64,000 bases of DNA from Macrostomum lignano (GCA_002269645.1 NIVC01001358.1:1-64000), one strand, 5' to 3'; numbered from the stretch's first letter, positions 1 to 32,040 are shown. Notes: a model not told the origin generated them from the letters alone. Made by a program: numbers and translations.

Positions 1-3000
1 TGTTTAATAATTTAATTTATTTTTGTCTTTTAGTGTATAATTATCAACTAGACTAAACCCATTTATCTATTGCCCTATACAGTTTTCATTTTTTTTATTT
101 ATTTAAATATACAGAATTGTAAATCATGAGTGCAAGCCTTGAAAATGACTGTTTTGTGTTGAAACGCAATTAGCTATAACAATAATTTACTTATATATTG
201 ATTTTGGCTTTCATTTCTCTATTATTTATTAAATGAGCATCTCTATTAGATTTAGACCACATATGCATATCCATAGGTTTTTAAACTATTTCAATAGGAA
301 TCTTACAAATTAGTATTTAATTAATAGAGCCATATCATGACCATATTATATAAAACAAAATGTTGAGATCAAAAAACAATTTGTAGTAAAGATTAATTAA
401 AGAATTAATATAGGCCTAAGACTTAATTAAAGTTCAAATAAACAAAATATATAATAAAAAGGTAGTAAAATAAAAAATAGCAGATAGAGAAAAAATTATA
501 TAAATAAAAATACAAACCAATAAAATCAAAAATTATTTTATTGATTGAGGTATGAGCTTTGTAATTTGATACTTATGTTATTATTTATTACTAATTACTA
601 TTAGACCTAGGCTTAGGGCCTATCTTATAATTTTAGACCTAACCTAGCCTAGCCTAGCCTTACCTAGGACAGCCTAGGTAGGATTCTTATTATGGTCTAG
701 GTCTAGACTAAGACATTTTAAGGCTAATAGGGCTAGGCCTATAGGCTTATATAGCAATATAAAATTGCTATTAAAATGTTAAGTTTTAAAGTTTATATTA
801 TAAATATTGATTTCAAACAATCAAACTCACTGATTTTAAATCAAAGATTCATATTCATTTTTCATCATGTTGTTCAGGCCTAATAACAATATAGGGCTAT
901 TAGTATTACTAGGCCCTAGGCTAGGCCCTAAGCCTAATTAAGAGTTTAAAAACAAGTCATAGGCCTAGGCCTAACTCTTATCAATTTAGCCTAAGCCTAA
1001 GAGGAAGGTTACTTACCCTTAAAATGTGAAAAGCATAGCTTTTATTTCTATCAAAATAATCACCTTTATTACTGAACACCTGGCCCATATTAAATATTTT
1101 TCATCTCAATTCTCTATTTAGACTATTTCTATTTGGCTTTAGGTGTACCAGGCCAGGGCGATTAAGACAATTCATAGACTAGGCCTATGCTAATGCCAAA
1201 GCTGATGTTCAACCCTTACTAGGCCTAGGCTATACAACATCATAAATGCAAGGGGCTAAGGAAAATTTCTGGGTTTTCTAGCCAACACTAAGTAGTATGG
1301 GCCTAAGTCAATAACCAATCAATTTAATAGGGCTAGGCTAAGCCTAATTATAAAAGAAAAGCCTTTAAATCTAATCAATTTTACTTCACTAAATACCAAA
1401 AACAATTGAGTAGCTTGACCTCAGACAGATGTAACTCGTGTGAATTGTGATCATCACACTTGGCTGGGGGTCTCCCTAAAACACGCCCCGCACCGCCCTG
1501 CAGCGCTACACATTAAAACAAATTGGACTATAACTGAAGACACTAAAAATGCGTTTTCTGTTAAGCTTCAAAGCTTTTATTAAATTTAGTTTTTTTAATT
1601 TGAAATATAAAATTCAGTGAATAATAAGTGATATTAATAATAATATTAATAAAGTAATAATAATATAATTTAATAATCAAAACGAGAATATAAAAAATAA
1701 TAACAATATTTATAATAATAATTAAAGATATTTATTCCATTACTCTTACAACAAATAGTTTTCCTTGCAATCAAATACTGCGTTGACACACCCGACCAGC
1801 ATGGATTTAATCGGTAGAAAAGGTAAACGTTTTCTACGATTAGATAGGGTAGATGGCATGTCGACTGCCAGCATAACATGCTTTCCTTCTGATTAAAAGC
1901 GGACTGTATATACTTGTATTGGGCAGTTATGGCGCGCAATTCAAAAGCCTACGCACAACCAATATTATAATGGCTCGACATATTTAATTAGTATAGCCTA
2001 TAGGGCATTGTGTTAGTATGTATGAATTCAAGACCTAGACTAATAAAGCAGTTTGTGTCTAGAGTCGAAAACTTTGGAAATGTGTCGCCCTAGCTTGCAC
2101 AAAAAGCCATGTATGACATGACTGAATGAAATTTAATTAGGAGGTTAATGATTGTAAAATAAACTAGCTACTTGGACCTCTTGACAATGACAATAAGGAT
2201 GAAATGGTCCTGTTGCAGGCAGATATTAATTGGCTTAAAAAAAAGTAAAAGCTTGATGGCTAGCTAGCTAGGTGGCCTTGGCTCACCCAGTTATTGGCCT
2301 TATATTGGCCTTCTTATCAATATGTGGGCCATTTTGTACTGCATTCTGCTTTAATCTACTTTGTTTTTCTTCTTTATTGCCAGGTATTTAGTATAATTTT
2401 TTAGCTCTTAGTTGTATTCTTTATTTTAATATCACTCTATACTTGTACCATGAAAAGAAACACAAAAGGCCTTGTCAATTTTAGGCCTATGATAGGTAGC
2501 TAGCTATGTTATTTTATTTTAGTAATAGGCCTATAGCTATTAAGAGTAGGCCTACTAAATTATTAGTCTATAAAATGTATATGGTCTAAAATAGGCTAGC
2601 TATTTTAGACCCTATTATATTTTATGCTTCTTGTCTAACAATCTAATAATTGTTGTAGGCCAATATTATGAAATGTATAGGCCTAGCTATAGAAAAAGAA
2701 AAAGAAGCCAATAACCTTCCTAATGAATAAATTAATTAATATTAGTTCAGTTGTGTATTTACTTTATATTTATTGTCATATGAATCCTATATACTAAAAA
2801 TGAGTTGTCTGTGGGTAGGTAGGTAGGTAGGTATGCGATAGATTTCAGAAAAAATGGCTCAACCGATTTTCTTCAAACTTGCACCATTCGATCAGAAATT
2901 TTCCTGGGACGGTACATGCATCTTGGCTAAGAAATTGCTCAATATTAAAGGGATTAAATATTCGAAAAACATGCTTTTTTGCAAAGGTCAAGCAGCTCTT

Positions 3001-3265
3001 TCGACCTGAAATGCATTGTAAGAATGCTAGAGAAAAAACTGACTGACTGAATTCCAATTGTGATAAAGATTACATCACAACCAGTTGAAAACAGTGCCGA
3101 ACAAATGCACACAAAACTTGATTTAAATTGCGTAACAATATTGCCAACTTAAATTGACACTGATATTGGCTGACTGAGAAATTGATTATGTCATAACTTT
3201 TTACTCTAACCGATTTGCTATAAGAATTTAATTATAAGGGCCACAATTCACGTATTCCAATTGAC

Positions 3266-3348
3266 AAGAGATAGCATAGATGCGAACAGACTGGAATGCT
3301 AATGCAGCGACCTGGGTTCGAATCTTAGTAGTGCAAAAAGATTTTTTT
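3266..3348 (+). promoter_or_regulatory. tRNA-derived (SINE-like) Pol III cassette; mirror copy at about 18808-18890 on the minus strand
   Basis: A-box-like TAGCATAGATG at 3272, B-box GGGTTCGAATC at 3314-3324, and a T7 run at 3342-3348. It does not fold into a full cloverleaf. Confidence 0.5.
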
Positions 3349-3404
3349 ATTCAAAAACCTTAAAAACACAAATGCTAAACACAAAAAAGCACAATGTCAA
3401 ACAT

Positions 3405-5225
3405 TAAAGAGCCACCATGTCAAACATTAAAGAGCCACCATGTCGAACATTAAAGAGCCATCATGTCGACCATTAAAGAGCCACCATGTCGAACATTAAA
3501 GAGCCACCATGTCGAACATTAAAGAGCCACCATGTCTAACATTAAAGAGCCACCATGTAAAACATAAAAAAGCCACCATGTCAAACATAAAAGAGCCACC
3601 ATGTCAAACATATATGTGAATCCAGGTCAAACAGTAAAGAGCCACCATGTCAAACATAAAAGAGCCACCATGTCGAACATAAAAGAACCACCATGTCCAA
3701 CATAAAAGAGCCACCATGTCAAACATTAAAGAGCCTCAATGTCAAACATTAAAGAGCCACCATGTCGAATATTAAAGAGCCACCATGTCTAACATTAAAG
3801 AGCCACCATGTAAAACATAAAAAAGCCACCATGTCAAACATAAAAGAGCCACCATGTCAAACATATATGTGAATCCAGGTCAAACAGTAAAGAGCCACCA
3901 TGTCAAACATAAAAGAGCCACCATGTCGAACATAAAAGAACCACCATGTCCAACATAAAAGAGCCACCATGTCAAACATTAAAGAGCCTCAATGTCAAAC
4001 ATTAAAGAGCCACCATGTCGAATATTAAAGAGCCACCATGTCTAACATTATAGAGCCACCATGTCGAACATTAAAGAGCCACTATGTCTAACATTAAAGA
4101 GCCACCATGTCGAATATTAAAGAGCCACCATGTCTAACATTAAAGAGCCACCATGTCGAACATTAAAGAGCCACTATGTCTAACATTAAAGAGCCACCAT
4201 GTCAAACATAAAAGAGCCACCATGTCAAACATAAAAGAGCCACCATGTCAAACATAAAAGAGCCACCATGTCAAACATATATGTGACTCCATGTCAATCA
4301 GTAAAGAGCCACCATGTCAAGCATAAAAGAGCCACCATGTCGAACATAAAAGAGCCACCATGTCAAACATATATGTGAATCCAGGTCAAACAGTAAGGAG
4401 CCACCATGTCAAACATAAAAGAGCCACCATGTCGAACATAAAAGAACCACCATGTCCAACATAAAAGAGCCACCATGTCAAACATTAAAGAGCCTCAATG
4501 TCAAACATTAAAGAGCCACCATGTCGAATATTAAAGAGCCACCATGTCTAACATTATAGAGCCACCATGTCGAACATTAAAGAGCCACTATGTCTAACAT
4601 TATAGAGCCACCATGTCGAATATTAAAGAGCCACCATGTCTAACATTAAAGAGCCACCATGTCGAATATTAAAGAGCCACCATGTCTAACATTAAAGAGC
4701 CACCATGTCTAACATTAAAAAGCCACCATGTCGAACATTAAAGAGCCACCATGTCGAACATATATGTGACTCCATGTCAAACAGTAAAGAGCCACCATGT
4801 CAAGCATAGAAGAGCCACCATGTCGAACATAAAAGAGCCATCATGTCAAACATTAAAGAGCCACCATGTCAAGCATAAAAGAGCCACCATGTAGAACATA
4901 AAAGAACCACCATGTCCAACATAAAAGAGCCACCATGTCAAATATTAAAGAGCCGCAATGTCAAACATTAAAGAGCCATCATGTCTAACATTAAACAGCC
5001 ACCATGTCGAACATTAAAGAGCCACCATGTCGAACATTAAAGAGCCACCGTGTCTAACATTAAAGAGCCACCATGTCTAACATTATAGAGCCACCATGTC
5101 GAACATTAAAGAGCCACCATGTCTAACATTAAAGAGCCACCATGTCGAACATTAAAGAGCCACCATGTCGAACATAAAAGAGCCACCATGTCAAACATTT
5201 AGGAGCCACCATGTCAAACATAAAA
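3405..5225 (+). repeat. 23-bp minisatellite (TAAAGAGCCACCATGTCRAACAT)n; mirror array at about 16748-18760
   Basis: Direct reading of tandem units; contains recurrent variant units ATATATGTGAATCCAGGTCAAACAG. Confidence 0.97.
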
Positions 5226-5334
5226 TTTACACAATTTCAAACGTAAAAGTAAGCGTCATGCCAATGTTAAAGGAGCCACTATAGAGCTAAGGAAATTGTA
5301 GCACTAGCTACCGGGTACTTATTGTATGGTGGAT

Positions 5335-5430
5335 GCTTACTATTTGGGGATGCTTGCTATCTGGGGATGCTTGCTATCTGGGGGATGCTTGCAATCTGGG
5401 GGATGCTTGCTATTTGGGGGATGCTTGCTG
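5335..5430 (+). repeat. 18-19-bp minisatellite (GGGGGATGCTTGCTATCT)x5; mirror at about 16542-16637
   Basis: Tandem units visible. Confidence 0.9.
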
Positions 5431-5721
5431 TCTTGGGATGATTTCTTTTTGCATTACACTTTATTTGAGCAGTTTGTCTGTCGTCTTTGTGAAGGCTTTT
5501 TTGGCTATCTTTTTGTTACTTGTAGAGAACAGAGATTCTATCCAGATGTCCCCCAACGGGGGCGAAGATTGCTAGTTATATACTTATATTGCATTTAGCC
5601 TAGGCATATCTACTCTAGTCTGCCTATCCTCTACCTATGTCTGTTCTCTCAATCATTATATTTTTACTTTTTCCCTCTCTTAATTCCTTTATATCATGCT
5701 TCTCAATTATCTCCCATCTTT

Positions 5722-5900
5722 GCCCTCCCCAATTCCCTCCTATCCTGCCTATCCCCAATTCCCTCCTATCCTGCCCACCCCCCCAATTCCCTCCTATCCT
5801 GCCCACCCCCCAATTCCCTCCTATCTTGCCCACCCCCCAATTCCCTCCTATCCTGCCCACCCCCCAATTCCTTCCTATCCTGCCCATCCCCCAATTTCCG
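5722..5900 (+). repeat. ~26-bp minisatellite (CCCCAATTCCCTCCTATCCTGCCCAC)n; mirror at about 16072-16250
   Basis: Tandem units visible. Confidence 0.9.
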
Positions 5901-6209
5901 CCATCCTGCCCTTCAATCTTTTCACCCTTGGGTTTTAAGCTATAAACCCAAGGCAATTCAAAATCTAGAAATGGATTTCAAATTGGAAAATTGAATTCAG
6001 CATTTCAAGCACCTTTCAAAAAGGCGAAACTATAGAGCTAGAAAATATGGAACTATTTAACTACCTTAAGTTCAATAAGTTATAGTTGGATATTGCCAAC
6101 TCTTTTCCAGGTGCCTCTATCTAGCTAATGCTAACAAAAATGTTGCAAGGTGTACTTTAATATTATATTTGTTCTAGTAAGCAGTTTTTCTGTGTCTCCC
6201 ATTCTACCC

Positions 6210-6600
6210 CACCTTTCCCTCCCGTTCTACCCTTCCATTCCTTCCCATTCTACCCCTCCATTCCCTCCCATTCTACCCCCACCATTCCCTCCCATTCTAC
6301 CCTTCCATTCCCTCACATTCTACCCCCTCCATTCCCTCCCATTCTACCCTTCCATTCCTTCCCATTCTACCCTCTATGCCTTCCATATACCCTCAATACT
6401 CTCCCTATACCCTCCATACCCTTCTATACCCATTCTTACCCTCCATATACCCTCCATACCATCCCTATACCCTCCATACCATTCCTATACCCTCAATACC
6501 ATCCCTATACCCTCCATACCATCCCTATACTCTCCTTATAACCTCTCCATACCCTCCATACCCTCCATACTTTTTCTATACCCACCCATGGACTCCCTGT
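6210..6600 (+). repeat. Degenerate pyrimidine-rich repeats (CCCTCCCATTCTA / CCCTCCATACC); mirror at about 15372-15762
   Basis: Low-complexity C/T-rich tandem motifs. Confidence 0.8.
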
Positions 6601-6804
6601 ACCCTCTATGCCCTCCCTATACTCTCCATACCCTCCTGCTTTTCCTATCCTTCCCGCGTTATACTTTTCCCTATCCAGCCTCTACTATTCCCTCTTTCCA
6701 CCTCCAGCGCCTCCCCCTCTCTAGCCCCTACCCTCTCTTCCTTTACTTTCCAGCCCCCATCCTCTACTCCCCTCCAGCGCCCACCCTCTTCTCCCATCAG
6801 CCCC

Positions 6805-7712
6805 TACCCTCTCCTCCACTCCAGCGCCCTCCCTCTCCTCCACTCCAGCGCCCTCCCTCTCCTCCACTCCAGGGCCCTCTCTCTCCACTCCAGCGCCCTC
6901 CCTCTCCTCCACTCCAGCGCCCTCCCTCTCCTCCACTCCAGCGCCCTCCCTCTCCTCCACTCCAGCGCCCTCCCTCTCCTCCACTCCAGCGCCCTCCCTC
7001 TCCTCCACTCCAGCGCCCTCCCTCTCCTCCACTCCAGCGCCCTCCCTCTCCTCCACTCCAGCGCCCTCCCTCTCCTCCACTCCAGGGCCCTCTCTCTCCT
7101 CCACTCCAGCGCCCTCCCTCTCCTCCACTCCAGCGCCCTCCCTCTCCTCCACTCCAGCGCCCTCCCTCTCCTCCACTCCAGCGCCCTCCCTCTCTTCCAC
7201 TCCAGCGCCCTCCCTCTCCTCCACTCCAGCGCCCTCCCTCTCCTCCACTCCAGCGCCCTCCCTCTCCTCCACTCCAGCGCCCTCCCTCTCCTCCACTCCA
7301 GCGCCCTCCCTCTCCTCCACTCCAGCGCCCTCCCTCTCCTCCACTCCAGCGCCCTCCCTCTCCTCCACTCCAGCGCCCTCCCTCTCCTCCACTCCAGCGC
7401 CCTCCCTCTCCTCCACTCCAGCGCCCTCCCTCTCCTCCACTCCAGCGCCCTCCCTCTCCTCCACTCCAGCGCCCTCCCTCTCCTCCACTCCAGCGCCCTC
7501 CCTCTCCTCCACTCCAGCGCCCTCCCTCTCCTCCACTCCAGCGCCCTCCCTCTCCTCCACTCCAGCGCCCTCCCTCTCCTCCACTCCAGCGCCCTCCCTC
7601 TCCTCCACTCCAGCGCCCTCCCTCTCCTCCACTCCAGCGCCCTCCCTCTCCTCCACTCCAGCGCCCTCCCTCTCCTCCACTCCAGCGCCCTCCCTCTCCT
7701 CCACTCCAGCGC
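6805..7712 (+). repeat. 24-bp minisatellite (CCCTCCCTCTCCTCCACTCCAGCG)x~38; mirror at about 14260-15167
   Basis: Near-perfect tandem array. The translations of both arms are identical, including the positions of variant units. Confidence 0.97.
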
Positions 7713-8824
7713 CCACCCTCTACTCTCCTTGGTTATCCCTTCGTTACGCTCTTCCCTCCTCTCTGTTTTACTTACTGTGTCATGCATAACCCGTCTGCTA
7801 CAGTGTTCTTAAATAGCCTTTTATACCCTCCTCTTTCCCTAGCCCCTCCTCCCCCGGCGGCTCCCCTTCTCGTAGCTCTGCTAATAAAATCGTAATTCTT
7901 CTTCTCTTCAGAATAATTTGCCCAGCTGCGAACTGTGATGGTGCATACCGGGTACTCGCAATTTAAAAAGCGTATGCTTCTTACTGATTTACTGATTTAA
8001 TTCCGACGCAACCAAGCAAATCGTTTACTTTCAAGTCCGTGCATTTTCGTTCGGCGTTAATGCCGTGTGGCGTTGGTGTAATACTATCGCGAAATTCAAT
8101 TTCCAATGTCATTATCTAACTATTGTCGCTTTTCTGTATTACAACTATATACAATACTTCTGCATTTATTGACGTAACATTGTGCCAATAATGTCACATT
8201 GTGTGGCCTCAATATGAATCTGTTGCTGAATGCAACTTATAGCCCATTGACCAGTTTAATCGCTTGAAATACATTGTAATGTAATACTGTATCGCTTTTG
8301 GCAATCGAAACGAGACTTTAGCCAGACTCCTCACTGATCCAAATGCTCCTCAAGCAAAGGTACGAGTATATGGAAAGCAGACTGAGCTCCGCAGACTTAG
8401 TATATTTGATCTTCGGATCGCGGATAGAACCAAGGAAATCTTGGTACGTAAATAAAATTGGAGTCACTTTTCCTACTTCCACTTTCCCTGCTCTTTCCCT
8501 GACCACAGTCTGTGCCCCAGGCTCAAGTTAGACCAACGCAAAATACTAACCTGAATAGGAAGCAAGCAACTCACTTCCCACTCTAGTCTTTTTCTGCCAC
8601 TGTTGTCTTGCAATACTCGCAAAGATCTCGTATGGCGTCCTATTTGAATTGGCGCGTCTCGTTAACGTAGTCGAAAGCAATACTGGTGCCAATTATTTGT
8701 GTCGATCAAGTTTCCTAGAGAATGATTTGTTGATAACTGTATATTCGCTGTCTTAGAGCTGCACGCTGTGTTTAACCATTACTTTGTCGTAGAGGAGCTG
8801 ATGAAGGGAGGCGTTGGGGCGGAC

Positions 8825-9310
8825 CTTTTGGAGGGGCGGAGCTGATGGGGGGCGGTAGCGGCGGAGCTTTTGGAGGGGCGGAGCTGATGGGGGCGGTAGC
8901 GGCGGAGCTTTTGGAGGGGCGGAGCTGATGGGGGCGGTAGGAGCGGAGCTGATGGGGGGCGGTAGCGGCGGAGCTTTTGGAGGGGCGGAGCTGATGGGGG
9001 CGGTAGGAGCGGAGCTGATGGGGGCGGTAGGGGCGGAGCTGATGGGGCGGTAGCGGCGGAGCTTTTGGAGGGGCGGAGCTGATGGGGGCGGTAGGAGCGG
9101 AGCTGATGGGGGCGGTAGGGGCGGAGCTGATGGGGGGCGGTAGGGCGGAGCTGATGGGGGCGGTAGCGGCGGAGCTTTTGGAGGGGCGGAGCTGATGGGG
9201 GCGGTAGGAGCGGAGCTGATGGGGGCGGTAGGGGCGGAGCTGATGGGGGCGGTAGGGGCGGAGCTGATGGGGGCGGTAGCGGCGGAGCTTTTGGAGGGCG
9301 GAGCTGATGG
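8825..9310 (+). repeat. G-rich minisatellite (GGAGCTGATGGGGGCGGTAG / GGAGCTTTTGGAGGGGC modules); shorter mirror array at about 12975-13145
   Basis: Tandem modules visible; the left copy is 330 bp longer than the right. Confidence 0.92.
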
Positions 9311-9974: not shown

Positions 9975-11470
9975 CAAGCGTTTTCAATGGCATGACGCAG
10001 CTCCGCAACATTCTGATGGGTTCGGCCTTTTTAAGCCTGTAGCTCTGGGCCTCAGAACTCAGAAATGAATCACTTAGAACTCTGGCTTCTCACTCCTGTC
10101 AGATGGTCAGCCCCGTGGTAGCTGGATTGTGTGGCGAGCAGCAAGGTCCTATAGCTAAGGGAAGACAGCGAGTCGAGAGACAAGCAGGGAGAATTTGAAA
10201 GGTAGAGATTAGCTAACCGCGGATTAACTAACCCGCTGCCACCAGTCCGTGCGCCCCGGCTCACCAAACCATGCAGCTACCTGTATTCCCTGCACACCGG
10301 AGGCGCCGTGGAAACAAGGCGGCCCAATCAGCTACTCAGCCCAATTTAAAAGCTGTGTTTGCAGCTCCCGTGAGATAGCAGCTGCATTATAGAGAAAATG
10401 ATGCTCAATGAGCTTTTTCATGCTCAATTTCAGTATCATGATGAGGACGCACTTTTTCCCAAATCCCGCGCTAGCACATGGGCTCGAAACTTACTAGCCT
10501 ACTAACAGTGGGCAAGGGGCATTTTTATCTTTTTTCTGCAAATTGTCATAGAATCTATACTAGATATAATGTCTGGCCATACTAGTAATAATACTGCCAG
10601 CAGTAGTCTAAGACTCCAATTCAATCTAAAGTGTGAAGTGAATTAAGGAGAAGGTTAAATCTAACAGTTATCTTTGTCGGCTTTATTTCTTTGTTCGCCG
10701 ATGGCTCAGATGAGTAGCTAAGCTAGTAGGCGCCGGTCACAGTGGACCAATGGCAAGGCAGTTCTCAGTCGACCAATCTAACAAATCAGTGAGCAAAACT
10801 GCCAAAAGTGCAGAATCGGCGCCAGAGATGTACTTTGTGCACTCTAGGGTAGCCAAGCGGCTCGGGTAAATGAATCATGCGGTCTCTGAGGTTCGAGTTA
10901 GCCTATCATCAGCGCTATGAGAGGCTAGTTGGCGCGTTGAAGGCTAAAAGTACATATCTTCGTATTTAGCAATGTAATAGTACATGTAGCTACCCCATAG
11001 ACTCGCCACCGCAAGAATCCCCTGCACAAGTCCCCTCTGTACCTGCATGGCCAACGCGATCTAGTCCCAGCAGTGTCCCTTATCATCGGCTATGACTTCG
11101 AGATTGACAGCAAAAAGACACTAGTTGGCAGGTAAGTGCAAAGCCCCTTCTAGTCGGAAGCCCGATTTCGAGAGTCCCGGTGTGGTGAGCCAGGGCGCAC
11201 GGGCTGGTGGCAGCAAGTTAGTTGATCTGCGGATTAGCTAATTTCTACTTTCAAAATTCTCCCTGCTCGTCTCTCGCTGTCCCTCTCTTAGCTATAGGAC
11301 CTAGACTGCTCGCCACACGATCAAGCTACCATGGGGCTGACCATCTGACAGGAGTGGGGGGCCAGGTCTCTAATTGATTTATTTCTGAGCCTGAGGCCCG
11401 AAGGCTTCCCTAACAAGGAGCCCGAAGGTCGAAACCCATCAATCAGTTTAGTTTCAATTTAAAACACTTG
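9975..11470. repeat. Diverged inner inverted repeat (about 9975-10270 vs 11178-11470) inside the palindrome spacer
   Basis: CTCCTGTCAGATGGTCAGCCCC (10083-10104) pairs with GGGGCTGACCATCTGACAGGAG (11333-11354). GCTGCCACCAGTCCGTGCGCCCCGGCTCACC pairs with GGTGAGCCAGGGCGCACGGGCTGGTGGCAGC. Substitutions and indels occur throughout. Confidence 0.85.
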
Positions 11471-11939
11471 CCTCGTTTTGAGGCCTGTTAACCAGTTCCA
11501 AGGTCTACTACTTATCTCAATGTAAATGCAAATTCTCAGGCTTTATTTTTAGTGTGTAATTTTAGCCATATTTAGACGGCCTCTCCGACATGGTACATGT
11601 AATTGGATTGAGCCTTGAAAGTACTCAGCAACATTATACATAAAGTGGCGCACAATGAATTAAGACCACCTAACACAAATTCGAACTTTTATAGTTTCAT
11701 AACCTTCACAGATTGCGGAAGCATTTAATCTAATCAGTTATAGATAACCGTGGTATCAATCAGTAAAATTATAGTTATGTGTTGTGTAATTACTCACAAT
11801 TGAGTCTGTTTAATTGAAGTCCTTATCTCACAATCGAATATGATAAGTCACACAGTAATAAGACCACTTAATTAATTGGGCTAAAAGGTAGGTGCTACAA
11901 CAGTGGGGCCCCTGCTGATTCCAAAGTCCAAAACATCAA

Positions 11940-12760
11940 GTTCAATACAACTCCAAGCAAAAATGATCTCGAACTCTCCTAGAATGGGAAAGGCAAAGCT
12001 CTATCGCCTGAATCGTGTAGGAAAATCAGGGCCCTGTTCGACCAAGGAGTTTCCCAGCGTGCCAAAGTCACGTACGCAGAAAACGTGCGTCCAGCAAGCA
12101 CTCAGGCGCCACAGCAGCACTGGCAAAACAGACTGTGGCTCAAGACCTGGCAGGGCACCGAAAACTGACCACCGACTGGATCGACGAATTGTGCGAATGC
12201 CCGAGTCCAACCGTCGGCTAACCGCTGTGGACATCAGCCGTAAACTTTTGGTGTCCAGCTGCACCCCATGACTGTCCGCCGCCGTCTGGTAGCTGCCGGA
12301 CTGCATGGCCGCATTGCTAGGAAGAAGCCATTCATCTCCGACAAAAACCGGAAGCGGCGCTTGAACTGGGCGAAGCAACATGCAAGCTCTACACCCCAGG
12401 ACTGGGGCCAAGGTCATCTGGAGTGATGAGAGCAAATTTTCCCGCACTGGTTCTGATGGTCGCCGGTATGTGCGCCACCGAGCTGGTGAGGAATTCGATT
12501 CCAGGTGCCCCGTTGGTTCCATGAAGCATGTAGATGGCAATGTCATGGTGTGGGCTGCATTCTCCAGAGCTGGACCTGGGCCAATAACTCGCATTGAGGG
12601 CATCATGGACAGAGGCTGTAGATGCGCTGCCAGTTTCAGCAGGACAACGATCCGAAGCTTGCTGAGAACAACATCCGCACCATGGACTGGCAATCCAATT
12701 GAGAATCTGTGCAACTGGGTCGAGCTGGACTGGGTTCATAACTTCACCGAATGACGATAG
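11940..12760 (+). pseudogene. Degenerate Tc1-family transposase (HTH plus DDE remnants, frameshifted)
   Basis: Motifs across frames: RPGRAPKTDHRLDRRIVR, RRRLVAAGLHGRIARKKPFIS, KVIWSDESKF, VMVWAAFS, FQQDNDPK, NPIENL. Several frameshifts and deletions; no TIRs found. Confidence 0.9.
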
Positions 12761-12917
12761 CTGCATGTGGATCTAATATCCCCACGATTACTAACCAAAG
12801 AAATAAAATGTCTAGCTTTTGATGAGATTGTGAGACTACATGTACATTACAGTATACACATGTATAAACTATACTAGACAAACAACTACACTACCAGCGT
12901 AGCTCGAATACACGTAC

Positions 12918-15900
12918 ACGTTGTGTATACTTCAATCGGTCGAATAAATAGAAAAACCATCCTCCATCAACTCCGCCCCTTCGATCCACCTCCATCAGCT
13001 CCGCCCCTACCGCCCCCCATCAGCTCCGCTCCTAACGCCCCCATCAGCTCCGCCCCTCCAAAAGCTCCGCCGCTACCGCCCCCATCAGCTCCGCCCCTCC
13101 AAAAGCTCCGCCGCTACCGCCCCCCATCAGCTCCGCCCCTCCAAAAGGTCCGCCCCAACGCCTCCCTTCATCAGCTCCTCTACGACAAAGTAATGGTTAA
13201 ACACAGCGTGCAGCTCTAAGACAGCGAATATACAGTTATCAACAAATCATTCTCTAGGAAACTTGATCGACACAAATAATTGGCACCAGTATTGCTTTCG
13301 ACTACGTTAACGAGACGCGCCAATTCAAATAGGACGCCATACGAGATCTTTGCGAGTATTGCAAGACAACAGTGGCAGAAAAAGACTAGAGTGGGAAGTG
13401 AGTTGCTTGCTTCCTATTCAGGTTAGTATTTTGCGTTGGTCTAACTTGAGCCTGGGGCACAGACTGTGGTCAGGGAAAGAGCAGGGAAAGTGGAAGTAGG
13501 AAAAGTGACTCCAATTTTATTTACGTACCAAGATTTCCTTGGTTCTATCCGCGATCCGAAGATCAAATATACTAAGTCTGCGGAGCTCAGTCTGCTTTCC
13601 ATATACTCGTACCTTTGCTTGAGGAGCATTTGGATCAGTGAGGAGTCTGGCTAAAGTCTCGTTTCGATTGCCAAAAGCGATACAGTATTACATTACAATG
13701 TATTTCAAGCGATTAAACTGGTCAATGGGCTATAAGTTGCATTCAGCAACAGATTCATATTGAGGCCACACAATGTGACATTATTGGCACAATGTTACGT
13801 CAATAAATGCAGAAGTATTGTATATAGTTGTAATACAGAAAAGCGACAATAGTTAGATAATGACATTGGAAATTGAATTTCGCGATAGTATTACACCAAC
13901 GCCACACGGCATTAACGCCGAACGAAAATGCACGGACTTGAAAGTAAACGATTTGCTTGGTTGCGTCGGAATTAAATCAGTAAATCAGTAAGAAGCATAC
14001 GCTTTTTAAATTGCGAGTACCCGGTATGCACCATCACAGTTCGCAGCTGGGCAAATTATTCTGAAGAGAAGAAGAATTACGATTTTATTAGCAGAGCTAC
14101 GAGAAGGGGAGCCGCCGGGGGAGGAGGGGCTAGGGAAAGAGGAGGGTATAAAAGGCTATTTAAGAACACTGTAGCAGACGGGTTATGCATGACACAGTAA
14201 GTAAAACAGAGAGGAGGGAAGAGCGTAACGAAGGGATAACCAAGGAGAGTAGAGGGTGGGCGCTGGAGTGGAGGAGAGGGAGGGCGCTGGAGTGGAGGAG
14301 AGGGAGGGCGCTGGAGTGGAGGAGAGGGAGGGCGCTGGAGTGGAGGAGAGGGAGGGCGCTGGAGTGGAGGAGAGGGAGGGCGCTGGAGTGGAGGAGAGGG
14401 AGGGCGCTGGAGTGGAGGAGAGGGAGGGCGCTGGAGTGGAGGAGAGGGAGGGCGCTGGAGTGGAGGAGAGGGAGGGCGCTGGAGTGGAGGAGAGGGAGGG
14501 CGCTGGAGTGGAGGAGAGGGAGGGCGCTGGAGTGGAGGAGAGGGAGGGCGCTGGAGTGGAGGAGAGGGAGGGCGCTGGAGTGGAGGAGAGGGAGGGCGCT
14601 GGAGTGGAGGAGAGGGAGGGCGCTGGAGTGGAGGAGAGGGAGGGCGCTGGAGTGGAGGAGAGGGAGGGCGCTGGAGTGGAGGAGAGGGAGGGCGCTGGAG
14701 TGGAGGAGAGGGAGGGCGCTGGAGTGGAGGAGAGGGAGGGCGCTGGAGTGGAGGAGAGGGAGGGCGCTGGAGTGGAAGAGAGGGAGGGCGCTGGAGTGGA
14801 GGAGAGGGAGGGCGCTGGAGTGGAGGAGAGGGAGGGCGCTGGAGTGGAGGAGAGGGAGGGCGCTGGAGTGGAGGAGAGAGAGGGCCCTGGAGTGGAGGAG
14901 AGGGAGGGCGCTGGAGTGGAGGAGAGGGAGGGCGCTGGAGTGGAGGAGAGGGAGGGCGCTGGAGTGGAGGAGAGGGAGGGCGCTGGAGTGGAGGAGAGGG
15001 AGGGCGCTGGAGTGGAGGAGAGGGAGGGCGCTGGAGTGGAGGAGAGGGAGGGCGCTGGAGTGGAGGAGAGGGAGGGCGCTGGAGTGGAGAGAGAGGGCCC
15101 TGGAGTGGAGGAGAGGGAGGGCGCTGGAGTGGAGGAGAGGGAGGGCGCTGGAGTGGAGGAGAGGGTAGGGGCTGATGGGAGAAGAGGGTGGGCGCTGGAG
15201 GGGAGTAGAGGATGGGGGCTGGAAAGTAAAGGAAGAGAGGGTAGGGGCTAGAGAGGGGGAGGCGCTGGAGGTGGAAAGAGGGAATAGTAGAGGCTGGATA
15301 GGGAAAAGTATAACGCGGGAAGGATAGGAAAAGCAGGAGGGTATGGAGAGTATAGGGAGGGCATAGAGGGTACAGGGAGTCCATGGGTGGGTATAGAAAA
15401 AGTATGGAGGGTATGGAGGGTATGGAGAGGTTATAAGGAGAGTATAGGGATGGTATGGAGGGTATAGGGATGGTATTGAGGGTATAGGAATGGTATGGAG
15501 GGTATAGGGATGGTATGGAGGGTATATGGAGGGTAAGAATGGGTATAGAAGGGTATGGAGGGTATAGGGAGAGTATTGAGGGTATATGGAAGGCATAGAG
15601 GGTAGAATGGGAAGGAATGGAAGGGTAGAATGGGAGGGAATGGAGGGGGTAGAATGTGAGGGAATGGAAGGGTAGAATGGGAGGGAATGGTGGGGGTAGA
15701 ATGGGAGGGAATGGAGGGGTAGAATGGGAAGGAATGGAAGGGTAGAACGGGAGGGAAAGGTGGGGTAGAATGGGAGACACAGAAAAACTGCTTACTAGAA
15801 CAAATATAATATTAAAGTACACCTTGCAACATTTTTGTTAGCATTAGCTAGATAGAGGCACCTGGAAAAGAGTTGGCAATATCCAACTATAACTTATTGA

Positions 15901-18900
15901 ACTTAAGGTAGTTAAATAGTTCCATATTTTCTAGCTCTATAGTTTCGCCTTTTTGAAAGGTGCTTGAAATGCTGAATTCAATTTTCCAATTTGAAATCCA
16001 TTTCTAGATTTTGAATTGCCTTGGGTTTATAGCTTAAAACCCAAGGGTGAAAAGATTGAAGGGCAGGATGGCGGAAATTGGGGGATGGGCAGGATAGGAA
16101 GGAATTGGGGGGTGGGCAGGATAGGAGGGAATTGGGGGGTGGGCAAGATAGGAGGGAATTGGGGGTGGGCAGGATAGGAGGGAATTGGGGGGGTGGGCAG
16201 GATAGGAGGGAATTGGGGGATAGGCAGGATAGGAGGGAATTGGGGAGGGCAAAGATGGGAGATAATTGAGAAGCATGATATAAAGGAATTAAGAGAGGGA
16301 AAAAGTAAAAATATAATGATTGAGAGAACAGACATAGGTAGAGGATAGGCAGACTAGAGTAGATATGCCTAGGCTAAATGCAATATAAGTATATAACTAG
16401 CAATCTTCGCCCCCGTTGGGGGACATCTGGATAGAATCTCTGTTCTCTACAAGTAACAAAAAGATAGCCAAAAAAGCCTTCACAAAGACGACAGACAAAC
16501 TGCTCAAATAAAGTGTAATGCAAAAAGAAATCATCCCAAGACAGCAAGCATCCCCAAATAGCAAGCATCCCCCAGATTGCAAGCATCCCCCAGATAGCAA
16601 GCATCCCCCAGATAGCAAGCATCCCCAAATAGTAAGCATCCACCATACAATAAGTACCCGGTAGCTAGTGCTACAATTTCCTTAGCTCTATAGTGGCTCC
16701 TTTAACATTGGCATGACGCTTACTTTTACGTTTGAAATTGTGTAAATTTTATGTTTGACATGGTGGCTCCTAAATGTTTGACATGGTGGCTCTTTTATGT
16801 TCGACATGGTGGCTCTTTAATGTTCGACATGGTGGCTCTTTAATGTTAGACATGGTGGCTCTTTAATGTTCGACATGGTGGCTCTATAATGTTAGACATG
16901 GTGGCTCTTTAATGTTAGACACGGTGGCTCTTTAATGTTCGACATGGTGGCTCTTTAATGTTCGACATGGTGGCTGTTTAATGTTAGACATGATGGCTCT
17001 TTAATGTTTGACATTGCGGCTCTTTAATATTTGACATGGTGGCTCTTTTATGTTGGACATGGTGGTTCTTTTATGTTCTACATGGTGGCTCTTTTATGCT
17101 TGACATGGTGGCTCTTTAATGTTTGACATGATGGCTCTTTTATGTTCGACATGGTGGCTCTTCTATGCTTGACATGGTGGCTCTTTACTGTTTGACATGG
17201 AGTCACATATATGTTTGACATGGTGGCTCTTTTATGTTTGACAAGGTGGCTCTTTAATGTTTTACGAGGTGGCTCTTTAATGTTCTTCATGGTAGCTCTT
17301 TTATGTTAGACATGATGGCTTTTTAATTTTCGACATGGTAGCACTTTAATGTTAGACATGGTGGCTCTTAAATGTTTGACGTGGTGGCTCTTTTATGTTC
17401 GACATGGTGGCTCTTTAATGTTCGACATGGTGGCTTTTTAATGTTAGACATGGTGGCTCTTTAATGTTAGACATGGTGGCTCTTTAATATTCGACATGGT
17501 GGCTCTTTAATGTTAGACATGGTGGCTCTTTAATATTCGACATGGTGGCTCTATAATGTTAGACATAGTGGCTCTTTAATGTTCGACATGGTGGCTCTAT
17601 AATGTTAGACATGGTGGCTCTTTAATATTCGACATGGTGGCTCTTTAATGTTTGACATTGAGGCTCTTTAATGTTTGACATGGTGGCTCTTTTATGTTGG
17701 ACATGGTGGTTCTTTTATGTTCGACATGGTGGCTCTTTTATGTTTGACATGGTGGCTCCTTACTGTTTGACCTGGATTCACATATATGTTTGACATGGTG
17801 GCTCTTTTATGTTCGACATGGTGGCTCTTTTATGCTTGACATGGTGGCTCTTTACTGATTGACATGGAGTCACATATATGTTTGACATGGTGGCTCTTTT
17901 ATGTTTGACATGGTGGCTCTTTTATGTTTGACATGGTGGCTCTTTTATGTTTGACATGGTGGCTCTTTAATGTTAGACATAGTGGCTCTTTAATGTTCGA
18001 CATGGTGGCTCTTTAATGTTAGACATGGTGGCTCTTTAATATTCGACATGGTGGCTCTTTAATGTTAGACATAGTGGCTCTTTAATGTTCGACATGGTGG
18101 CTCTATAATGTTAGACATGGTGGCTCTTTAATATTCGACATGGTGGCTCTTTAATGTTTGACATTGAGGCTCTTTAATGTTTGACATGGTGGCTCTTTTA
18201 TGTTGGACATGGTGGTTCTTTTATGTTCGACATGGTGGCTCTTTTATGTTTGACATGGTGGCTCTTTACTGTTTGACCTGGATTCACATATATGTTTGAC
18301 ATGGTGGCTCTTTTATGTTTGACATGGTGGCTTTTTTATGTTTTACATGGTGGCTCTTTAATGTTAGACATGGTGGCTCTTTAATATTCGACATGGTGGC
18401 TCTTTAATGTTTGACATTGAGGCTCTTTAATGTTTGACATGGTGGCTCTTTTATGTTGGACATGGTGGTTCTTTTATGTTCGACATGGTGGCTCTTTTAT
18501 GTTTGACATGGTGGCTCTTTACTGTTTGACCTGGATTCACATATATGTTTGACATGGTGGCTCTTTTATGTTTGACATGGTGGCTTTTTTATGTTTTACA
18601 TGGTGGCTCTTTAATGTTAGACATGGTGGCTCTTTAATGTTCGACATGGTGGCTCTTTAATGTTCGACATGGTGGCTCTTTAATGGTCGACATGATGGCT
18701 CTTTAATGTTCGACATGGTGGCTCTTTAATGTTTGACATGGTGGCTCTTTAATGTTTGACATTGTGCTTTTTTGTGTTTAGCATTTGTGTTTTTAAGGTT
18801 TTTGAATAAAAAAATCTTTTTGCACTACTAAGATTCGAACCCAGGTCGCTGCATTAGCATTCCAGTCTGTTCGCATCTATGCTATCTCTTGTCAATTGGA

Positions 18901-20367
18901 ATACGTGAATTGTGGCCCTTATAATTAAATTCTTATAGCAAATCGGTTAGAGTAAAAAGTTATGACATAATCAATTTCTCAGTCAGCCAATATCAGTGTC
19001 AATTTAAGTTGGCAATATTGTTACGCAATTTAAATCAAGTTTTGTGTGCATTTGTTCGGCACTGTTTTCAACTGGTTGTGATGTAATCTTTATCACAATT
19101 GGAATTCAGTCAGTCAGTTTTTTCTCTAGCATTCTTACAATGCATTTCAGGTCGAAAGAGCTGCTTGACCTTTGCAAAAAAGCATGTTTTTCGAATATTT
19201 AATCCCTTTAATATTGAGCAATTTCTTAGCCAAGATGCATGTACCGTCCCAGGAAAATTTCTGATCGAATGGTGCAAGTTTGAAGAAAATCGGTTGAGCC
19301 ATTTTTTCTGAAATCTATCGCATACCTACCTACCTACCTACCCACAGACAACTCATTTTTAGTATATAGGATTCATATGACAATAAATATAAAGTAAATA
19401 CACAACTGAACTAATATTAATTAATTTATTCATTAGGAAGGTTATTGGCTTCTTTTTCTTTTTCTATAGCTAGGCCTATACATTTCATAATATTGGCCTA
19501 CAACAATTATTAGATTGTTAGACAAGAAGCATAAAATATAATAGGGTCTAAAATAGCTAGCCTATTTTAGACCATATACATTTTATAGACTAATAATTTA
19601 GTAGGCCTACTCTTAATAGCTATAGGCCTATTACTAAAATAAAATAACATAGCTAGCTACCTATCATAGGCCTAAAATTGACAAGGCCTTTTGTGTTTCT
19701 TTTCATGGTACAAGTATAGAGTGATATTAAAATAAAGAATACAACTAAGAGCTAAAAAATTATACTAAATACCTGGCAATAAAGAAGAAAAACAAAGTAG
19801 ATTAAAGCAGAATGCAGTACAAAATGGCCCACATATTGATAAGAAGGCCAATATAAGGCCAATAACTGGGTGAGCCAAGGCCACCTAGCTAGCTAGCCAT
19901 CAAGCTTTTACTTTTTTTTAAGCCAATTAATATCTGCCTGCAACAGGACCATTTCATCCTTATTGTCATTGTCAAGAGGTCCAAGTAGCTAGTTTATTTT
20001 ACAATCATTAACCTCCTAATTAAATTTCATTCAGTCATGTCATACATGGCTTTTTGTGCAAGCTAGGGCGACACATTTCCAAAGTTTTCGACTCTAGACA
20101 CAAACTGCTTTATTAGTCTAGGTCTTGAATTCATACATACTAACACAATGCCCTATAGGCTATACTAATTAAATATGTCGAGCCATTATAATATTGGTTG
20201 TGCGTAGGCTTTTGAATTGCGCGCCATAACTGCCCAATACAAGTATATACAGTCCGCTTTTAATCAGAAGGAAAGCATGTTATGCTGGCAGTCGACATGC
20301 CATCTACCCTATCTAATCGTAGAAAACGTTTACCTTTTCTACCGATTAAATCCATGCTGGTCGGGTG
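12918..20367 (-). repeat. Right arm (7450 bp) of the giant inverted repeat
   Basis: Runs from ACGTTGTGT (12918) to GGTCGGGTG (20367). Unique sequence mirrors the left arm; the differences I found are confined to tandem arrays. Confidence 0.97.
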
Positions 20368-20855: not shown

Positions 20856-21120
20856 TCAATAATAGTGCCTAACCCAATACAGGAAGTTCCCAAACACTTT
20901 TGGCGGCGGGAAGAGGCGGCGCCACAGGTACTCATTGAGGACGTTGAGGTGGGTGTCAAACACGACAAACAGGGCGTCCCTAGTGCCGTGCATCGCCCTG
21001 AATTTAGCCTTGACGCCTGCCCATGACCCCTCAATGGTGTTAATAAGGACGGCCGGGTCATGGGGGTCCACGAAATGGAATCGGTGATTGACAGCCACAT
21101 GATTCTGCAAGCCGCCATAG
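20856..21120 (-). pseudogene. C-terminal fragment of a Merlin/IS1595 (ISXO2-like) transposase
   Basis: HVAVNHRFHFVDPHDPAVLINTIEGSWAGVK...LNEYLWRR fits the recalled HxxVNHxxxFVDP...NTIEGxW...YLxExxWR signature. The N-terminal part is missing. Confidence 0.85.
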
Positions 21121-32039: not shown

Positions 32040-32040
32040 G

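What the first reader, a model, noticed from the sequence alone, without database searches (positions are those of the whole stretch)
1789..20367. 18.6-kb palindrome whose 7.5-kb arms are an ordered cassette of at least six minisatellite arrays
Seen: two inverted arms, effectively identical in unique sequence, each carrying the same sequence of modules (GGTA microsatellite, tRNA-like cassette, 23-, 19-, 26- and 24-bp arrays, G-rich array) around a non-palindromic 3533-bp spacer. I found no intact gene in the arms. Known: Drosophila Foldback elements have long TIRs built of tandem repeats, but at a much smaller scale. Inference: this is a giant foldback-type element, or a palindromic amplification kept homogeneous by arm-to-arm conversion. 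It would be able to form a very large hairpin and would be a rearrangement hotspot.
Basis: partly seen in the sequence, partly recalled or inferred. Interest (0 to 1): 0.8.

Follow-up and report, generated by a model that had tools for sequence, protein, structure and literature searches.

The report
Young noncoding palindrome around dead transposon
A stretch of ordinary, gene-free, minisatellite-rich animal DNA has very recently been copied back-to-front next to itself, giving an 18.6-kb palindrome with a dead Tc1-type transposon at its centre; this is a known kind of repair or replication accident, not a giant jumping element.

Summary
Positions 1789-20367 form an 18,579-bp palindrome. From the outer ends inward to 8936/13037 the arms have no substitutions in about 7,148 aligned bp. 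They differ only by an in-register loss of eight 23-bp units in the left arm and four 1-bp changes in G/C homopolymers.

All other differences lie within about 450 bp of the centre:
- the G-rich array has 23 units on the left and 8 on the right;
- there are three substitutions in that array;
- there is a 157-bp right-only segment.

The "3533-bp spacer" is that 157-bp segment plus a dead 3.37-kb Tc1/mariner element. The element has 30-bp TIRs (27/30), TA on both sides, a frameshifted and truncated transposase, and a nested 1.3-kb inverted-repeat element.

The arms carry no gene, tRNA or Rfam RNA. There is no target-site duplication at the outer ends and no other copy in the window. The rest of the window has the same array-after-array texture without any inverted repeat.

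Best reading: a recent fold-back or template-switch inverted duplication of local DNA, whose short loop was later enlarged by a TA-targeted Tc1-like insertion. A giant Foldback-type transposon is not supported. An assembly error is unlikely but cannot be excluded without reads. The source organism is an unidentified metazoan.

The parts
1789..8936 (.). Left arm, identical stratum. It holds AT-rich unique DNA and then (GGTA)n, 23-bp, 18-bp, 27-bp, 23/47-bp, 20/60-bp and 24-bp arrays, a 1.1-kb unique block, and the first five units of the G-rich array.
   Evidence: No substitutions against the reverse complement of 13037-20367. Arrays.
13037..20367 (.). Right arm, identical stratum. It is the mirror image of 1789-8936.
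17216..17399 (.). Eight 23-bp units present only in the right arm.
   Evidence: These are unique unit variants; the best match elsewhere has 21 mismatches out of 184. The left arm therefore lost them in register, rather than the right arm gaining them.
8937..9387 (.). Left inner arm. It holds the rest of the G-rich array (23 units in all, with a CEF higher-order repeat), then 44 bp of unique sequence, then TA.
   Evidence: Unit strings are ABCDCEBCEFGCEFHDCEFFDIJ on the left and ABCDCKLM on the right. Substitutions are at 8937, 9314 and 9317.
12918..13036 (.). Right inner arm. It holds 44 bp of unique sequence and the last three G-rich units (M, L, K).
12761..12917 (.). 157-bp single-copy segment, probably the original short loop of the palindrome.
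   Evidence: It has no counterpart in the left arm and no similar sequence elsewhere in the window.
9388..12757 (+). Dead Tc1/mariner-like element, flanked by TA at 9386-9387 and 12758-12759. If the termini are instead placed at the canonical CAGT, the element is 9396-12749.
   Evidence: The 30-bp TIRs match at 27/30. The left end carries two direct repeats of the TCAGTCAAGTT type. HTH_Tnp_Tc3_2 hit at E=4e-15.
11980..12727 (+). Transposase remnant. It needs at least five frame changes, has internal deletions, and lacks the C-terminal third, including the last catalytic residue.
   Evidence: Three-frame translation, ORFs and Pfam.
10058..11389 (.). Nested 1.33-kb element with inverted arms of about 210 bp that are about 87% complementary.
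   Evidence: Inverted pairs I2-I4.
9688..9765 (+). Degenerate relic of the G-rich array inside the Tc1-like element.
   Evidence: Position 9705-9724 matches the array unit with one mismatch. Sequence read.

Best explanation
This is a real, evolutionarily very young inverted segmental duplication (palindrome) of about 7.5 kb of ordinary, non-coding, minisatellite-rich DNA in a metazoan genome. It is not a mobile element and has no evident function.

Proposed history:
1. A break or a stalled replication fork let a 3' end fold back on its own strand. The end primed at a few bases of inverted microhomology; the arms meet the loop at ...ACGT / ACGT.... It then copied about 7.5 kb in reverse, leaving a single-copy loop of about 160 bp (12761-12917).
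2. A second switch or end-joining event reconnected the new copy to the downstream flank at 20367/20368, next to a (TGC)5 tract.
3. A defective, trans-mobilised 3.37-kb Tc1-like element then inserted at a TA at the left edge of the loop. This enlarged the spacer to 3.5 kb, which should make the palindrome more stable.
4. Since then only the fastest mutation classes have acted. One 8-unit minisatellite deletion and G/C homopolymer slippage occurred in the outer arms. The G-rich array beside the centre was heavily remodelled.

What is shown: the structure, the identity pattern, the absence of genes, the dead Tc1-like element with TA flanks, and the absence of a target-site duplication.

What is inferred: the fold-back mechanism, the order of events, and the youth of the duplication.
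For: - Identity: no substitutions in about 7,148 bp. The differences are limited to an 8-unit in-register deletion and four G/C homopolymer indels.
- Independent copies: the two arms differ in array lengths, and each is joined to a different unique flank. The two flanks share only AAT-type low-complexity sequence.
- One transposon between mirror copies: the left arm abuts the left end of the Tc1-like element and the right arm abuts its right end. The layout is therefore a single element between mirror copies, not two dispersed copies mis-joined.
- TA flanks: mirror symmetry of the element stops exactly outside TA at 9386-87 and 12758-59, as expected for a Tc1/mariner target-site duplication.
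- Original loop: the remaining 157 bp are unique.
- Local texture: the remaining 44 kb of the window shows the same succession of unrelated arrays and has no inverted repeat of 150 bp or more. The 'cassette' is therefore the ordinary character of this DNA, duplicated.
- Internal clock: the two gypsy LTRs are 279/279 identical, yet the adjoining 21-bp array is 808 bp at one LTR and 68 bp at the other. In this genome arrays change length before substitutions appear.
- Published parallel: human fold-back inverted duplications have single-copy spacers of 0.8-70 kb and 2-8 bp of inverted microhomology or inverted repeat pairs at the junction (PMC3907307). Rearrangements of palindromes concentrate at the centre, and small spacers are the least stable (PMC8327919).
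Against: - No reads, second haplotype or related genome were available, so neither the assembly nor the state before duplication could be checked.
- A 670-bp run of N lies only 1.77 kb beyond the right arm.
- A heavily decayed 3.4-kb element must have transposed after a very recent duplication.
- Canonical Tc1 termini (CAGT) lie 8 bp inside the termini proposed here.
- Three substitutions and a 15-unit length difference cluster in the G-rich array. This model must attribute them to hypermutability of that array near the centre.
- A relic of the G-rich array inside the transposon is unexplained.
- The classical fold-back model yields terminal, not interstitial, products. A second template switch has to be assumed.
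Confidence: 0.5

Rival explanations
1. Fold-back seeded by the transposon, or by an older short inverted repeat. In this reading the dead Tc1-like element was already present, with an older diverged inverted repeat around it. That repeat consisted of the 22-bp TIRs, a 10-bp flank, a 44-bp segment and the G-rich arrays. A break, possibly a transposase cut at one end, exposed single-stranded DNA. The inverted repeats annealed across the 3.3-kb element and synthesis copied 7.15 kb outward. This would give two age strata.
For: - Divergence changes as a step. There are six substitutions in 145 alignable bp inward of 8937/13036, against none in 7,148 bp outward. Simple estimate: (145/7293)^6, about 6e-11.
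- The 3,310-bp spacer matches the median fold-back spacer of 3,428 bp, and inverted Alu or L1 pairs at such junctions are documented (PMC3907307).
- Inverted repeats up to 30 kb apart and up to 25% diverged interact in single-stranded DNA (PMC10164571).
- The canonical CAGT termini and the direct repeats of the binding-site type start at 9396.
- The flanks read TT/AA as mirror images of each other rather than TA/TA.
Against: - Three of the six substitutions lie in the transposon's own TIRs, which are usually imperfect. The other three lie in one unstable array.
- The 44-bp unique segment has no substitutions.
- The 157-bp right-only block, and the fact that symmetry stops exactly at TA, would both be coincidences.
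- The origin of the older inverted repeat would itself need explaining.
Confidence: 0.2
2. An old palindrome kept uniform by arm-to-arm gene conversion, as on mammalian sex chromosomes, with a recent long conversion tract covering the outer 7.15 kb.
For: - The near-perfect identity, the diverged innermost part and the structural changes around the centre all resemble conserved primate X palindromes (PMC8327919).
- A decayed transposon in the spacer fits an old structure.
Against: - Identity is perfect to the very last outer base. If conversion faded at the edges of homology, divergence would be expected at both edges.
- Six fast-evolving arrays keep identical orders of unit variants.
- There are no genes in the arms for selection to preserve.
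- The arms, at 7.5-7.6 kb, fall just under the 8-kb criterion used for that class.
Confidence: 0.13
3. An assembly artefact. A single-copy locus, or two haplotypes of it, was joined head-to-head by a chimeric or fold-back read or by a mis-resolved assembly graph.
For: - The arms have no substitutions, and their small differences are classes that are also typical of long-read consensus error or of allelic variation (homopolymers, repeat copy number).
- A scaffold gap of 670 N lies 1.77 kb to the right.
- The region is extremely repetitive.
Against: - The centre is a 3.3-3.5-kb asymmetric spacer with no SMRTbell, ONT, Nextera or TruSeq adapter. Read-level fold-back chimeras have essentially no spacer.
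- The sequence beyond the right arm is not the reverse complement of the left flank. The arm therefore exists in two different genomic contexts.
- The arms abut opposite ends of one transposon.
- The arms differ by 184 bp and 330 bp in two arrays, so they were assembled from different molecules.
Confidence: 0.12
4. A giant Foldback-type or long-TIR transposon whose 7.6-kb TIRs are made of tandem arrays.
For: - Its form resembles FB, Galileo and Tetris elements, which have long, internally repetitive TIRs.
- The two TIRs of one copy can differ in repeat number (PMC3573991).
Against: - There is no target-site duplication.
- There is no other copy in the window, and none of the three exact patterns searched, two in JGI metagenomes and one in IMG/VR, was found.
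- The termini CACCCGACC... resemble no known TIR, and no transposase is linked to them.
- The arms contain about 3.5 kb of unique DNA and at least seven unrelated arrays, like the surrounding genome.
- The arms are about six times longer than the longest Galileo TIR.
Confidence: 0.04

Closest known systems
Fold-back (intrastrand template-switch) inverted duplications, as sequenced in human germline rearrangements (Hermetz et al. 2014, PMC3907307) and modelled in yeast (PMC10622511, PMC10164571)
   Same: Two inverted copies lie around a single-copy spacer in the range of hundreds of bp to a few kb. There is short inverted homology where the spacer meets the inverted copy. Repeats or transposable elements are sometimes found at that junction.
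   Different: The human cases are megabase-sized, terminal, and joined to a deletion, telomere or translocation. This one is 7.5 kb, interstitial, has unique DNA on both sides and appears fixed in an assembly. The spacer is also mostly a transposon that probably arrived later.
Large sex-chromosome palindromes of mammals (human Y P1-P8; primate X palindromes, PMC8327919)
   Same: The arms are at least 99.9% identical, the spacer is asymmetric, and structural changes are concentrated at the centre of symmetry.
   Different: Those palindromes carry testis-expressed gene families, are conserved for millions of years through gene conversion and selection, and are annotated at arms of 8 kb or more. 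Here the arms are gene-free minisatellite DNA of 7.5-7.6 kb, and long-term conversion is neither shown nor needed.
Foldback-like transposons (Drosophila FB, Galileo, Tetris; Meloidogyne Tm1)
   Same: They have long inverted termini containing tandem repeats, and repeat numbers can differ between the two termini.
   Different: Those elements have TIRs of 1.3 kb or less, built from one or a few related repeat families. They have 7-9-bp target-site duplications, many genomic copies and a cognate transposase of P or Mutator type. None of these features was found here.
Tc1/mariner elements of the IR-DR type (this applies to the central element only)
   Same: It has an HTH_Tnp_Tc3_2 domain and a DDE-type transposase remnant with the motifs WSDESKF and FQQDNDPK. 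It has short TIRs with a repeated binding-site-like motif and TA flanks.
   Different: The element is dead: frameshifted, internally deleted and truncated at the 3' end. It is swollen to 3.4 kb by nested insertions. The conserved CAGT lies 8 bp inside the TA-flanked termini.

Membership tests
Foldback-like DNA transposons (FB / Galileo / Tetris) | Direct target-site duplication flanking the element (7 bp in Galileo per PMC3573991; 9 bp in FB from my own knowledge) | tested here: not met
   The left flank ends ...GTTGACA and the right flank starts CATTGTT.... Only a 2-bp CA matches, and there is no match for k=3-12.
Foldback-like DNA transposons (FB / Galileo / Tetris) | Long TIRs that are internally repetitive | tested here: inconclusive
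   The arms do contain tandem arrays. However, they are 7.6 kb long, against a maximum of 1.25 kb in Galileo. They also hold at least seven unrelated arrays plus about 3.5 kb of unique DNA, like the non-palindromic remainder of the window.
Foldback-like DNA transposons (FB / Galileo / Tetris) | A dispersed multi-copy family with shared termini | tested here: inconclusive
   There is no second copy within the 64-kb window. Exact-pattern scans of JGI metagenomes and IMG/VR found nothing. The source genome itself could not be searched.
Foldback-like DNA transposons (FB / Galileo / Tetris) | A cognate transposase between the TIRs in autonomous copies | tested here: not met
   The only coding remnant is a dead Tc1-like transposase whose own TIRs lie at 9388-9417 and 12728-12757, not at the outer ends.
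Fold-back inverted duplication | Inverted copies separated by a single-copy spacer | tested here: met
   The spacer is 3,310-3,533 bp as assembled, or about 160 bp once the transposon is removed. The published range is 766-70,466 bp.
Fold-back inverted duplication | Inverted (micro)homology at the boundary between spacer and duplication | tested here: inconclusive
   The arms end at the self-complementary ACGT, and the TIR pair gives 29/33 inverted homology. However, the innermost bases of any palindrome look like this. The pre-duplication allele is needed to decide.
Fold-back inverted duplication | Distal end joined to a telomere, translocation or deletion | not testable with these tools
   Here the distal end joins unique AT-rich DNA at 20368. 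Whether sequence was deleted there cannot be known without an ancestral allele.
Gene-conversion-maintained genomic palindromes (sex-chromosome type) | Arms of at least 8 kb with at least 99% identity (criteria of PMC8327919) | tested here: inconclusive
   The identity criterion is met: no substitutions in 7.15 kb. The arms are 7.45-7.6 kb, just below the length cut-off.
Gene-conversion-maintained genomic palindromes (sex-chromosome type) | Protein-coding gene families in the arms | tested here: not met
   The only long ORFs are translations of the arrays, and ORFs from unique blocks have no Pfam hit. No tRNA or Rfam RNA was found.
Gene-conversion-maintained genomic palindromes (sex-chromosome type) | Persistence across species or individuals with ongoing arm-to-arm conversion | not testable with these tools
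   No related genome or population data could be reached, and the organism was not identified.
Tc1/mariner (central element) | Transposase with a Tc3-type HTH domain and a DDE catalytic core | tested here: met
   HTH_Tnp_Tc3_2 at E=4e-15. The motifs WSDESKF and FQQDNDPK are readable in shifted frames. The gene is not intact.
Tc1/mariner (central element) | Terminal inverted repeats flanked by a TA duplication | tested here: met
   The 30-bp TIRs match at 27/30, with TA at 9386-87 and 12758-59. Caveat: the canonical CAGT lies 8 bp further in, where the flanks read TT/AA.
Palindromic chimeric-read assembly artefact | Arms meet with no spacer or with an adapter, the second flank is the reverse complement of the first, and the arms are identical including repeat lengths | tested here: not met
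   The spacer is 3.3-3.5 kb and contains no adapter. The flanks are unrelated apart from AAT-type low-complexity sequence. The arms differ by 184 bp and 330 bp in two arrays. Read-level proof is still missing.

The most novel reading that the evidence does not exclude
The whole 18.6-kb unit could be a mobile or functional entity. One possibility is a foldback-like element with record 7.6-kb array-built TIRs that uses an unknown, non-duplicating insertion mechanism. Another is a long hairpin-RNA locus whose transcription through both arms yields small RNAs. Neither is excluded, because the source genome and its RNA data could not be searched.
Probability: 0.04. Interest if true: 0.8.

Novelty: new member of a known kind. 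Interest (0 to 1): 0.3.

Why it matters
If it is confirmed with reads, this is a clean natural snapshot of a palindrome soon after its birth. The arms have no substitutions, and only minisatellite length, homopolymer length and the centre have changed. A transposon insertion has turned a short, unstable loop into a long, stabilising spacer.

This would be useful as a worked example of three things:
- how interstitial palindromes arise and survive;
- how fast minisatellites mutate relative to point substitutions in this genome;
- how to vet palindromes in repeat-rich assemblies.

It does not reveal a new kind of element or a new function.

Tried and rejected
- Organism identification failed. 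The best match to the gypsy pol ORF is 75% identical, on a Logan contig from SRR31628392, and Macrostomum lignano proteins match at 60-69%. A search with the TRAUB exon returned nothing. The Cys-loop receptor exon gave one hit at 47%. Exact-protein look-ups for three window ORFs were not on record.
- No other copies were found. The arm terminus and the 23-mer are absent from JGI metagenomes, and the 24-mer is absent from IMG/VR. No eukaryotic genome collection was available.
- The tRNA or SINE idea for 3240-3330 was rejected.
- A hidden gene in the arms was rejected.
- Sequencing adapters at the centre or at the junctions were not found.
- The idea that the right arm gained 8 units by duplication was rejected. 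Those units are unique variants, so the left arm lost them.
- A small transposon (MITE) reading of the 157-bp right-only block was rejected, because I read no terminal inverted repeats at its ends in the sequence.
- DIRS, Polinton, Helitron and herpes-like readings were rejected, because the spacer encodes only a Tc1-like remnant.
- One Pfam call failed because the submitted frames contained stop codons.
Full report
**Observation**

The repeat finder reports inverted arms 1789-5249/16907-20367 and 5807-8983/12989-16165.

I aligned the left arm globally against the reverse complement of the right arm. From the outer ends (1789/20367) inward to 8936/13037 there is not one substitution in about 7,148 aligned bases. 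The only differences in that stretch are:
- a 184-bp block (8 x 23 bp) present only in the right arm, at 17216-17399;
- four single-base indels (left 5416 and 5806; right 16609 and 16219), each in a run of four to six G or C.

The eight extra units are unique sequence variants. Their best match elsewhere in either array has 21 mismatches out of 184. The left arm therefore lost them in register; the right arm did not gain them.

Tandem Repeats Finder shows the same order of arrays in both arms:
- a 23-bp array, 80 copies on the left and 88 on the right;
- an 18-bp array;
- a 27-bp array;
- a 23/47-bp array;
- a 20/60-bp array;
- a 24-bp array of 41 copies;
- a G-rich 24/41/113-bp array.

The 'tRNA-like cassette' is not supported. 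ARAGORN finds no tRNA in the window. Rfam finds nothing at gathering thresholds and no tRNA at E<=1. Relaxed ARAGORN gives only a chance-level hit elsewhere. What exists is a GGTTCGAATC motif at 3315-3324.

**The centre**

The G-rich arrays differ. Written as unit types, the left is ABCDCEBCEFGCEFHDCEFFDIJ (23 units) and the right is ABCDCKLM (8 units), with three private substitutions at 8937, 9314 and 9317. After the arrays, 44 bp of unique sequence are identical in both arms.

Then the two sides diverge:
- The left side reads ...ACACAACGTA-TA-TCGTCATTCAGTCAAGTTTTGAACCCAGTC....
- The right side (plus strand) reads ...GACTGGGTTCATAACTTCACCGAATGACGA-TA-, followed by 157 bp found nowhere else in the window, and then CACGTTGTGT....

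The 30-bp ends match at 27/30 as inverted repeats. The 22-bp core occurs only at these two places in the window. The left end carries two TCAGTCAAGTT-type direct repeats 44 bp apart.

Between these ends lies a transposase remnant. One ORF hits HTH_Tnp_Tc3_2 at E=4e-15, and the motifs WSDESKF and FQQDNDPK are readable. Reading through the gene needs at least five frame changes. It also has internal deletions and lacks its C-terminal third. A 1.33-kb unit with its own inverted arms of about 210 bp is nested at 10058-11389.

The spacer is therefore a dead 3.37-kb Tc1/mariner-like element (9388-12757) flanked by TA on each side, plus a 157-bp single-copy block.

**Surroundings**

The window is metazoan nuclear DNA. 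It contains:
- a Ty3/gypsy pol ORF, whose 279-bp LTR cores are 100% identical;
- ankyrin exons on the minus strand between 36 and 46 kb;
- a TRAUB (AATF C-terminal) exon at 26243-26614;
- a Cys-loop receptor ligand-binding exon at 62123-62371, E=3e-16.

From 26 to 63 kb the window is packed with more than twenty unrelated minisatellite arrays. That part contains no inverted repeat of 150 bp or more. Nothing in the arms or spacer is similar to anything else in the window. The 'ordered cassette of arrays' is therefore the normal texture of this genome region, duplicated once in reverse.

A 670-bp run of N lies at 22133-22802, 1.77 kb beyond the right arm.

**Is it a transposon?**

- The outer ends have no target-site duplication. 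The left flank ends GTTGACA and the right flank begins CATTGTT, so only two bases agree.
- The termini (CACCCGACCAGC...) are unlike any TIR I know, and no transposase is associated with them.
- The arms hold no gene. The long ORFs are translated arrays, and ten ORFs from the unique blocks have no Pfam hit.
- Galileo, the longest-TIR foldback-like element documented in the papers I read, reaches 1.25 kb and has 7-bp duplications (PMC3573991).

I therefore reject membership in the Foldback-like class. Copy number in the source genome could not be tested.

**Is it an assembly artefact?**

Several features argue against this:
- Read-level fold-back chimeras have no spacer, or an adapter, at the centre. 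Here there are 3.3-3.5 kb of asymmetric sequence and no adapter.
- The sequence beyond the right arm is not the reverse complement of the left flank. The two flanks share only AAT-type low complexity. The arm therefore sits in two genomic contexts.
- The left arm abuts the left end of the Tc1-like element and the right arm abuts its right end. This is what one transposon between two mirror copies predicts. A mis-join of two dispersed copies would not give this.
- The arms differ by 184 bp and 330 bp in two arrays, so they were built from different molecules.

Features that keep the doubt alive are the nearby gap, the extreme repetitiveness, and the fact that homopolymer and copy-number differences are also what consensus error or allelic variation would produce. 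I put the artefact at about 0.12.

**Mechanism**

The identity pattern points to youth. No substitutions in 7,148 bp gives a 95% upper bound of about 4e-4 on arm divergence. Assuming 1e-9 to 1e-8 substitutions per site per generation, that is at most about 2e4 to 2e5 generations. This figure is an inference, not a measurement.

The window supplies its own calibration. The two gypsy LTR cores are identical over 279 bp, yet the adjoining 21-bp array is 808 bp at one LTR and 68 bp at the other. Arrays here change length before substitutions accumulate.

The best-supported history has four steps:
1. A 3' end folds back on its own strand and primes at a few bases of inverted homology; the arms end in the self-complementary ACGT. 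It copies about 7.5 kb in reverse around a loop of about 160 bp.
2. A second switch or end-joining event reconnects to downstream DNA at 20368, directly beside a (TGC)5 tract.
3. A defective Tc1-like element inserts at a TA on the left edge of the loop.
4. Centre-proximal remodelling of the G-rich array follows.

This matches sequenced fold-back inverted duplications. Those have single-copy spacers of 766-70,466 bp and 2-8 bp of inverted microhomology or inverted repeat pairs at the junction (PMC3907307). It also matches the finding that palindromes rearrange mainly around their centre and that small spacers are the least stable (PMC8327919). On that basis the transposon insertion would have stabilised the structure.

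From my own knowledge (not checked here), break-induced synthesis is prone to template switching and to frameshifts in homopolymers. That could also account for the four 1-bp differences.

**Rival for the centre**

Divergence changes as a step rather than a gradient. There are six substitutions in 145 alignable bp inward of 8937/13036, against none outward. The 3,310-bp distance between the TIRs is close to the median fold-back spacer.

The canonical CAGT termini, with mirror-image TT/AA flanks, would fit a different model. In that model an older short inverted repeat around a resident transposon, or a transposase cut at one end, seeded the fold-back. Inverted repeats 30 kb apart and up to 25% diverged can do this in single-stranded DNA (PMC10164571).

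Against this model:
- Half of the six substitutions are in the transposon's own TIRs.
- The 44-bp unique segment is identical in both arms.
- The 157-bp block would be unexplained.
- The end of symmetry exactly at TA would be a coincidence.

I rate this model at 0.2, and an old palindrome maintained by conversion at 0.13.

**What stays unexplained**

A degenerate relic of the G-rich array lies inside the transposon at about 9688-9765. Position 9705-9724 matches the unit with one mismatch. No mirror copy exists on the right.

The organism was not identified.

**Verdict**

The interpretation as a giant foldback element is not supported. The structure is a young, gene-free inverted segmental duplication with a dead Tc1-like element in its spacer, which makes it a new member of a known kind. 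Interest is modest (0.3). Its main value is as a clean early-stage palindrome and as a locus that needs read-level validation.

Noticed in passing
window 22133-22802: A 670-bp run of N, a sized scaffold gap, lies 1.77 kb to the right of the palindrome. The contig that carries the palindrome ends there.
   Followed up: partly
window 27767-32387: A gag-less Ty3/gypsy element lies on the minus strand. Its pol ORF is 28940-32023, with PR-RT-RNaseH-IN domains. Its 279-bp LTR cores (28575-28853 and 32041-32319) are 100% identical. The 21-bp GGAAGTAGATGGAAGTGAAAT array next to the LTR is 808 bp on one side and 68 bp on the other, which implies very fast minisatellite expansion.
   Followed up: partly
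window 26000-63000: More than twenty unrelated minisatellite arrays with periods of 14-42 bp and lengths up to 1.5 kb, plus a long (AG)n tract and a long (GACA)n tract, fill the introns and intergenic DNA of this region. This is an unusually array-dense genome texture.
   Followed up: partly
window 33745-46468 (minus strand): Several ankyrin-repeat ORFs (36338-36718, 37237-38586, 42520-43128) and a weak CARD-like ORF (33745-34074, E=0.012) look like exons of one large gene whose introns are filled with arrays.
   Followed up: partly
window 26243-26614 (+) and 62123-62371 (+): A TRAUB (AATF C-terminal) exon (E=5e-13) ends right before a 16/32-bp array. A Cys-loop receptor ligand-binding exon (E=3e-16) lies near the right end of the window. 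Both indicate a metazoan host, but neither identified the species.
   Followed up: partly
window 9688-9765: A degenerate relic of the G-rich array lies inside the Tc1-like element, in the same orientation as the left-arm array, with no mirror copy on the right.
   Followed up: partly
window 10058-11389: A 1.33-kb unit with inverted arms of about 210 bp (about 87% complementary), nested in the Tc1-like element. It is probably a small foldback or MITE-like insertion and was not classified.
   Followed up: no
window 20798-21164 (minus strand): An ORF with the motif ...NTIEGSWAGVKAKFRAMHGT... resembles, from memory, ISXO2/IS1595-like transposase domains of animals. It had no Pfam hit at E<=0.05.
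   Followed up: partly
window 400-940, 2490-2700, 21194-21287: Short palindromic AGGCCT/TAGGCCTA-containing motifs recur in the AT-rich DNA of both flanks and in the outer arm block.
   Followed up: no
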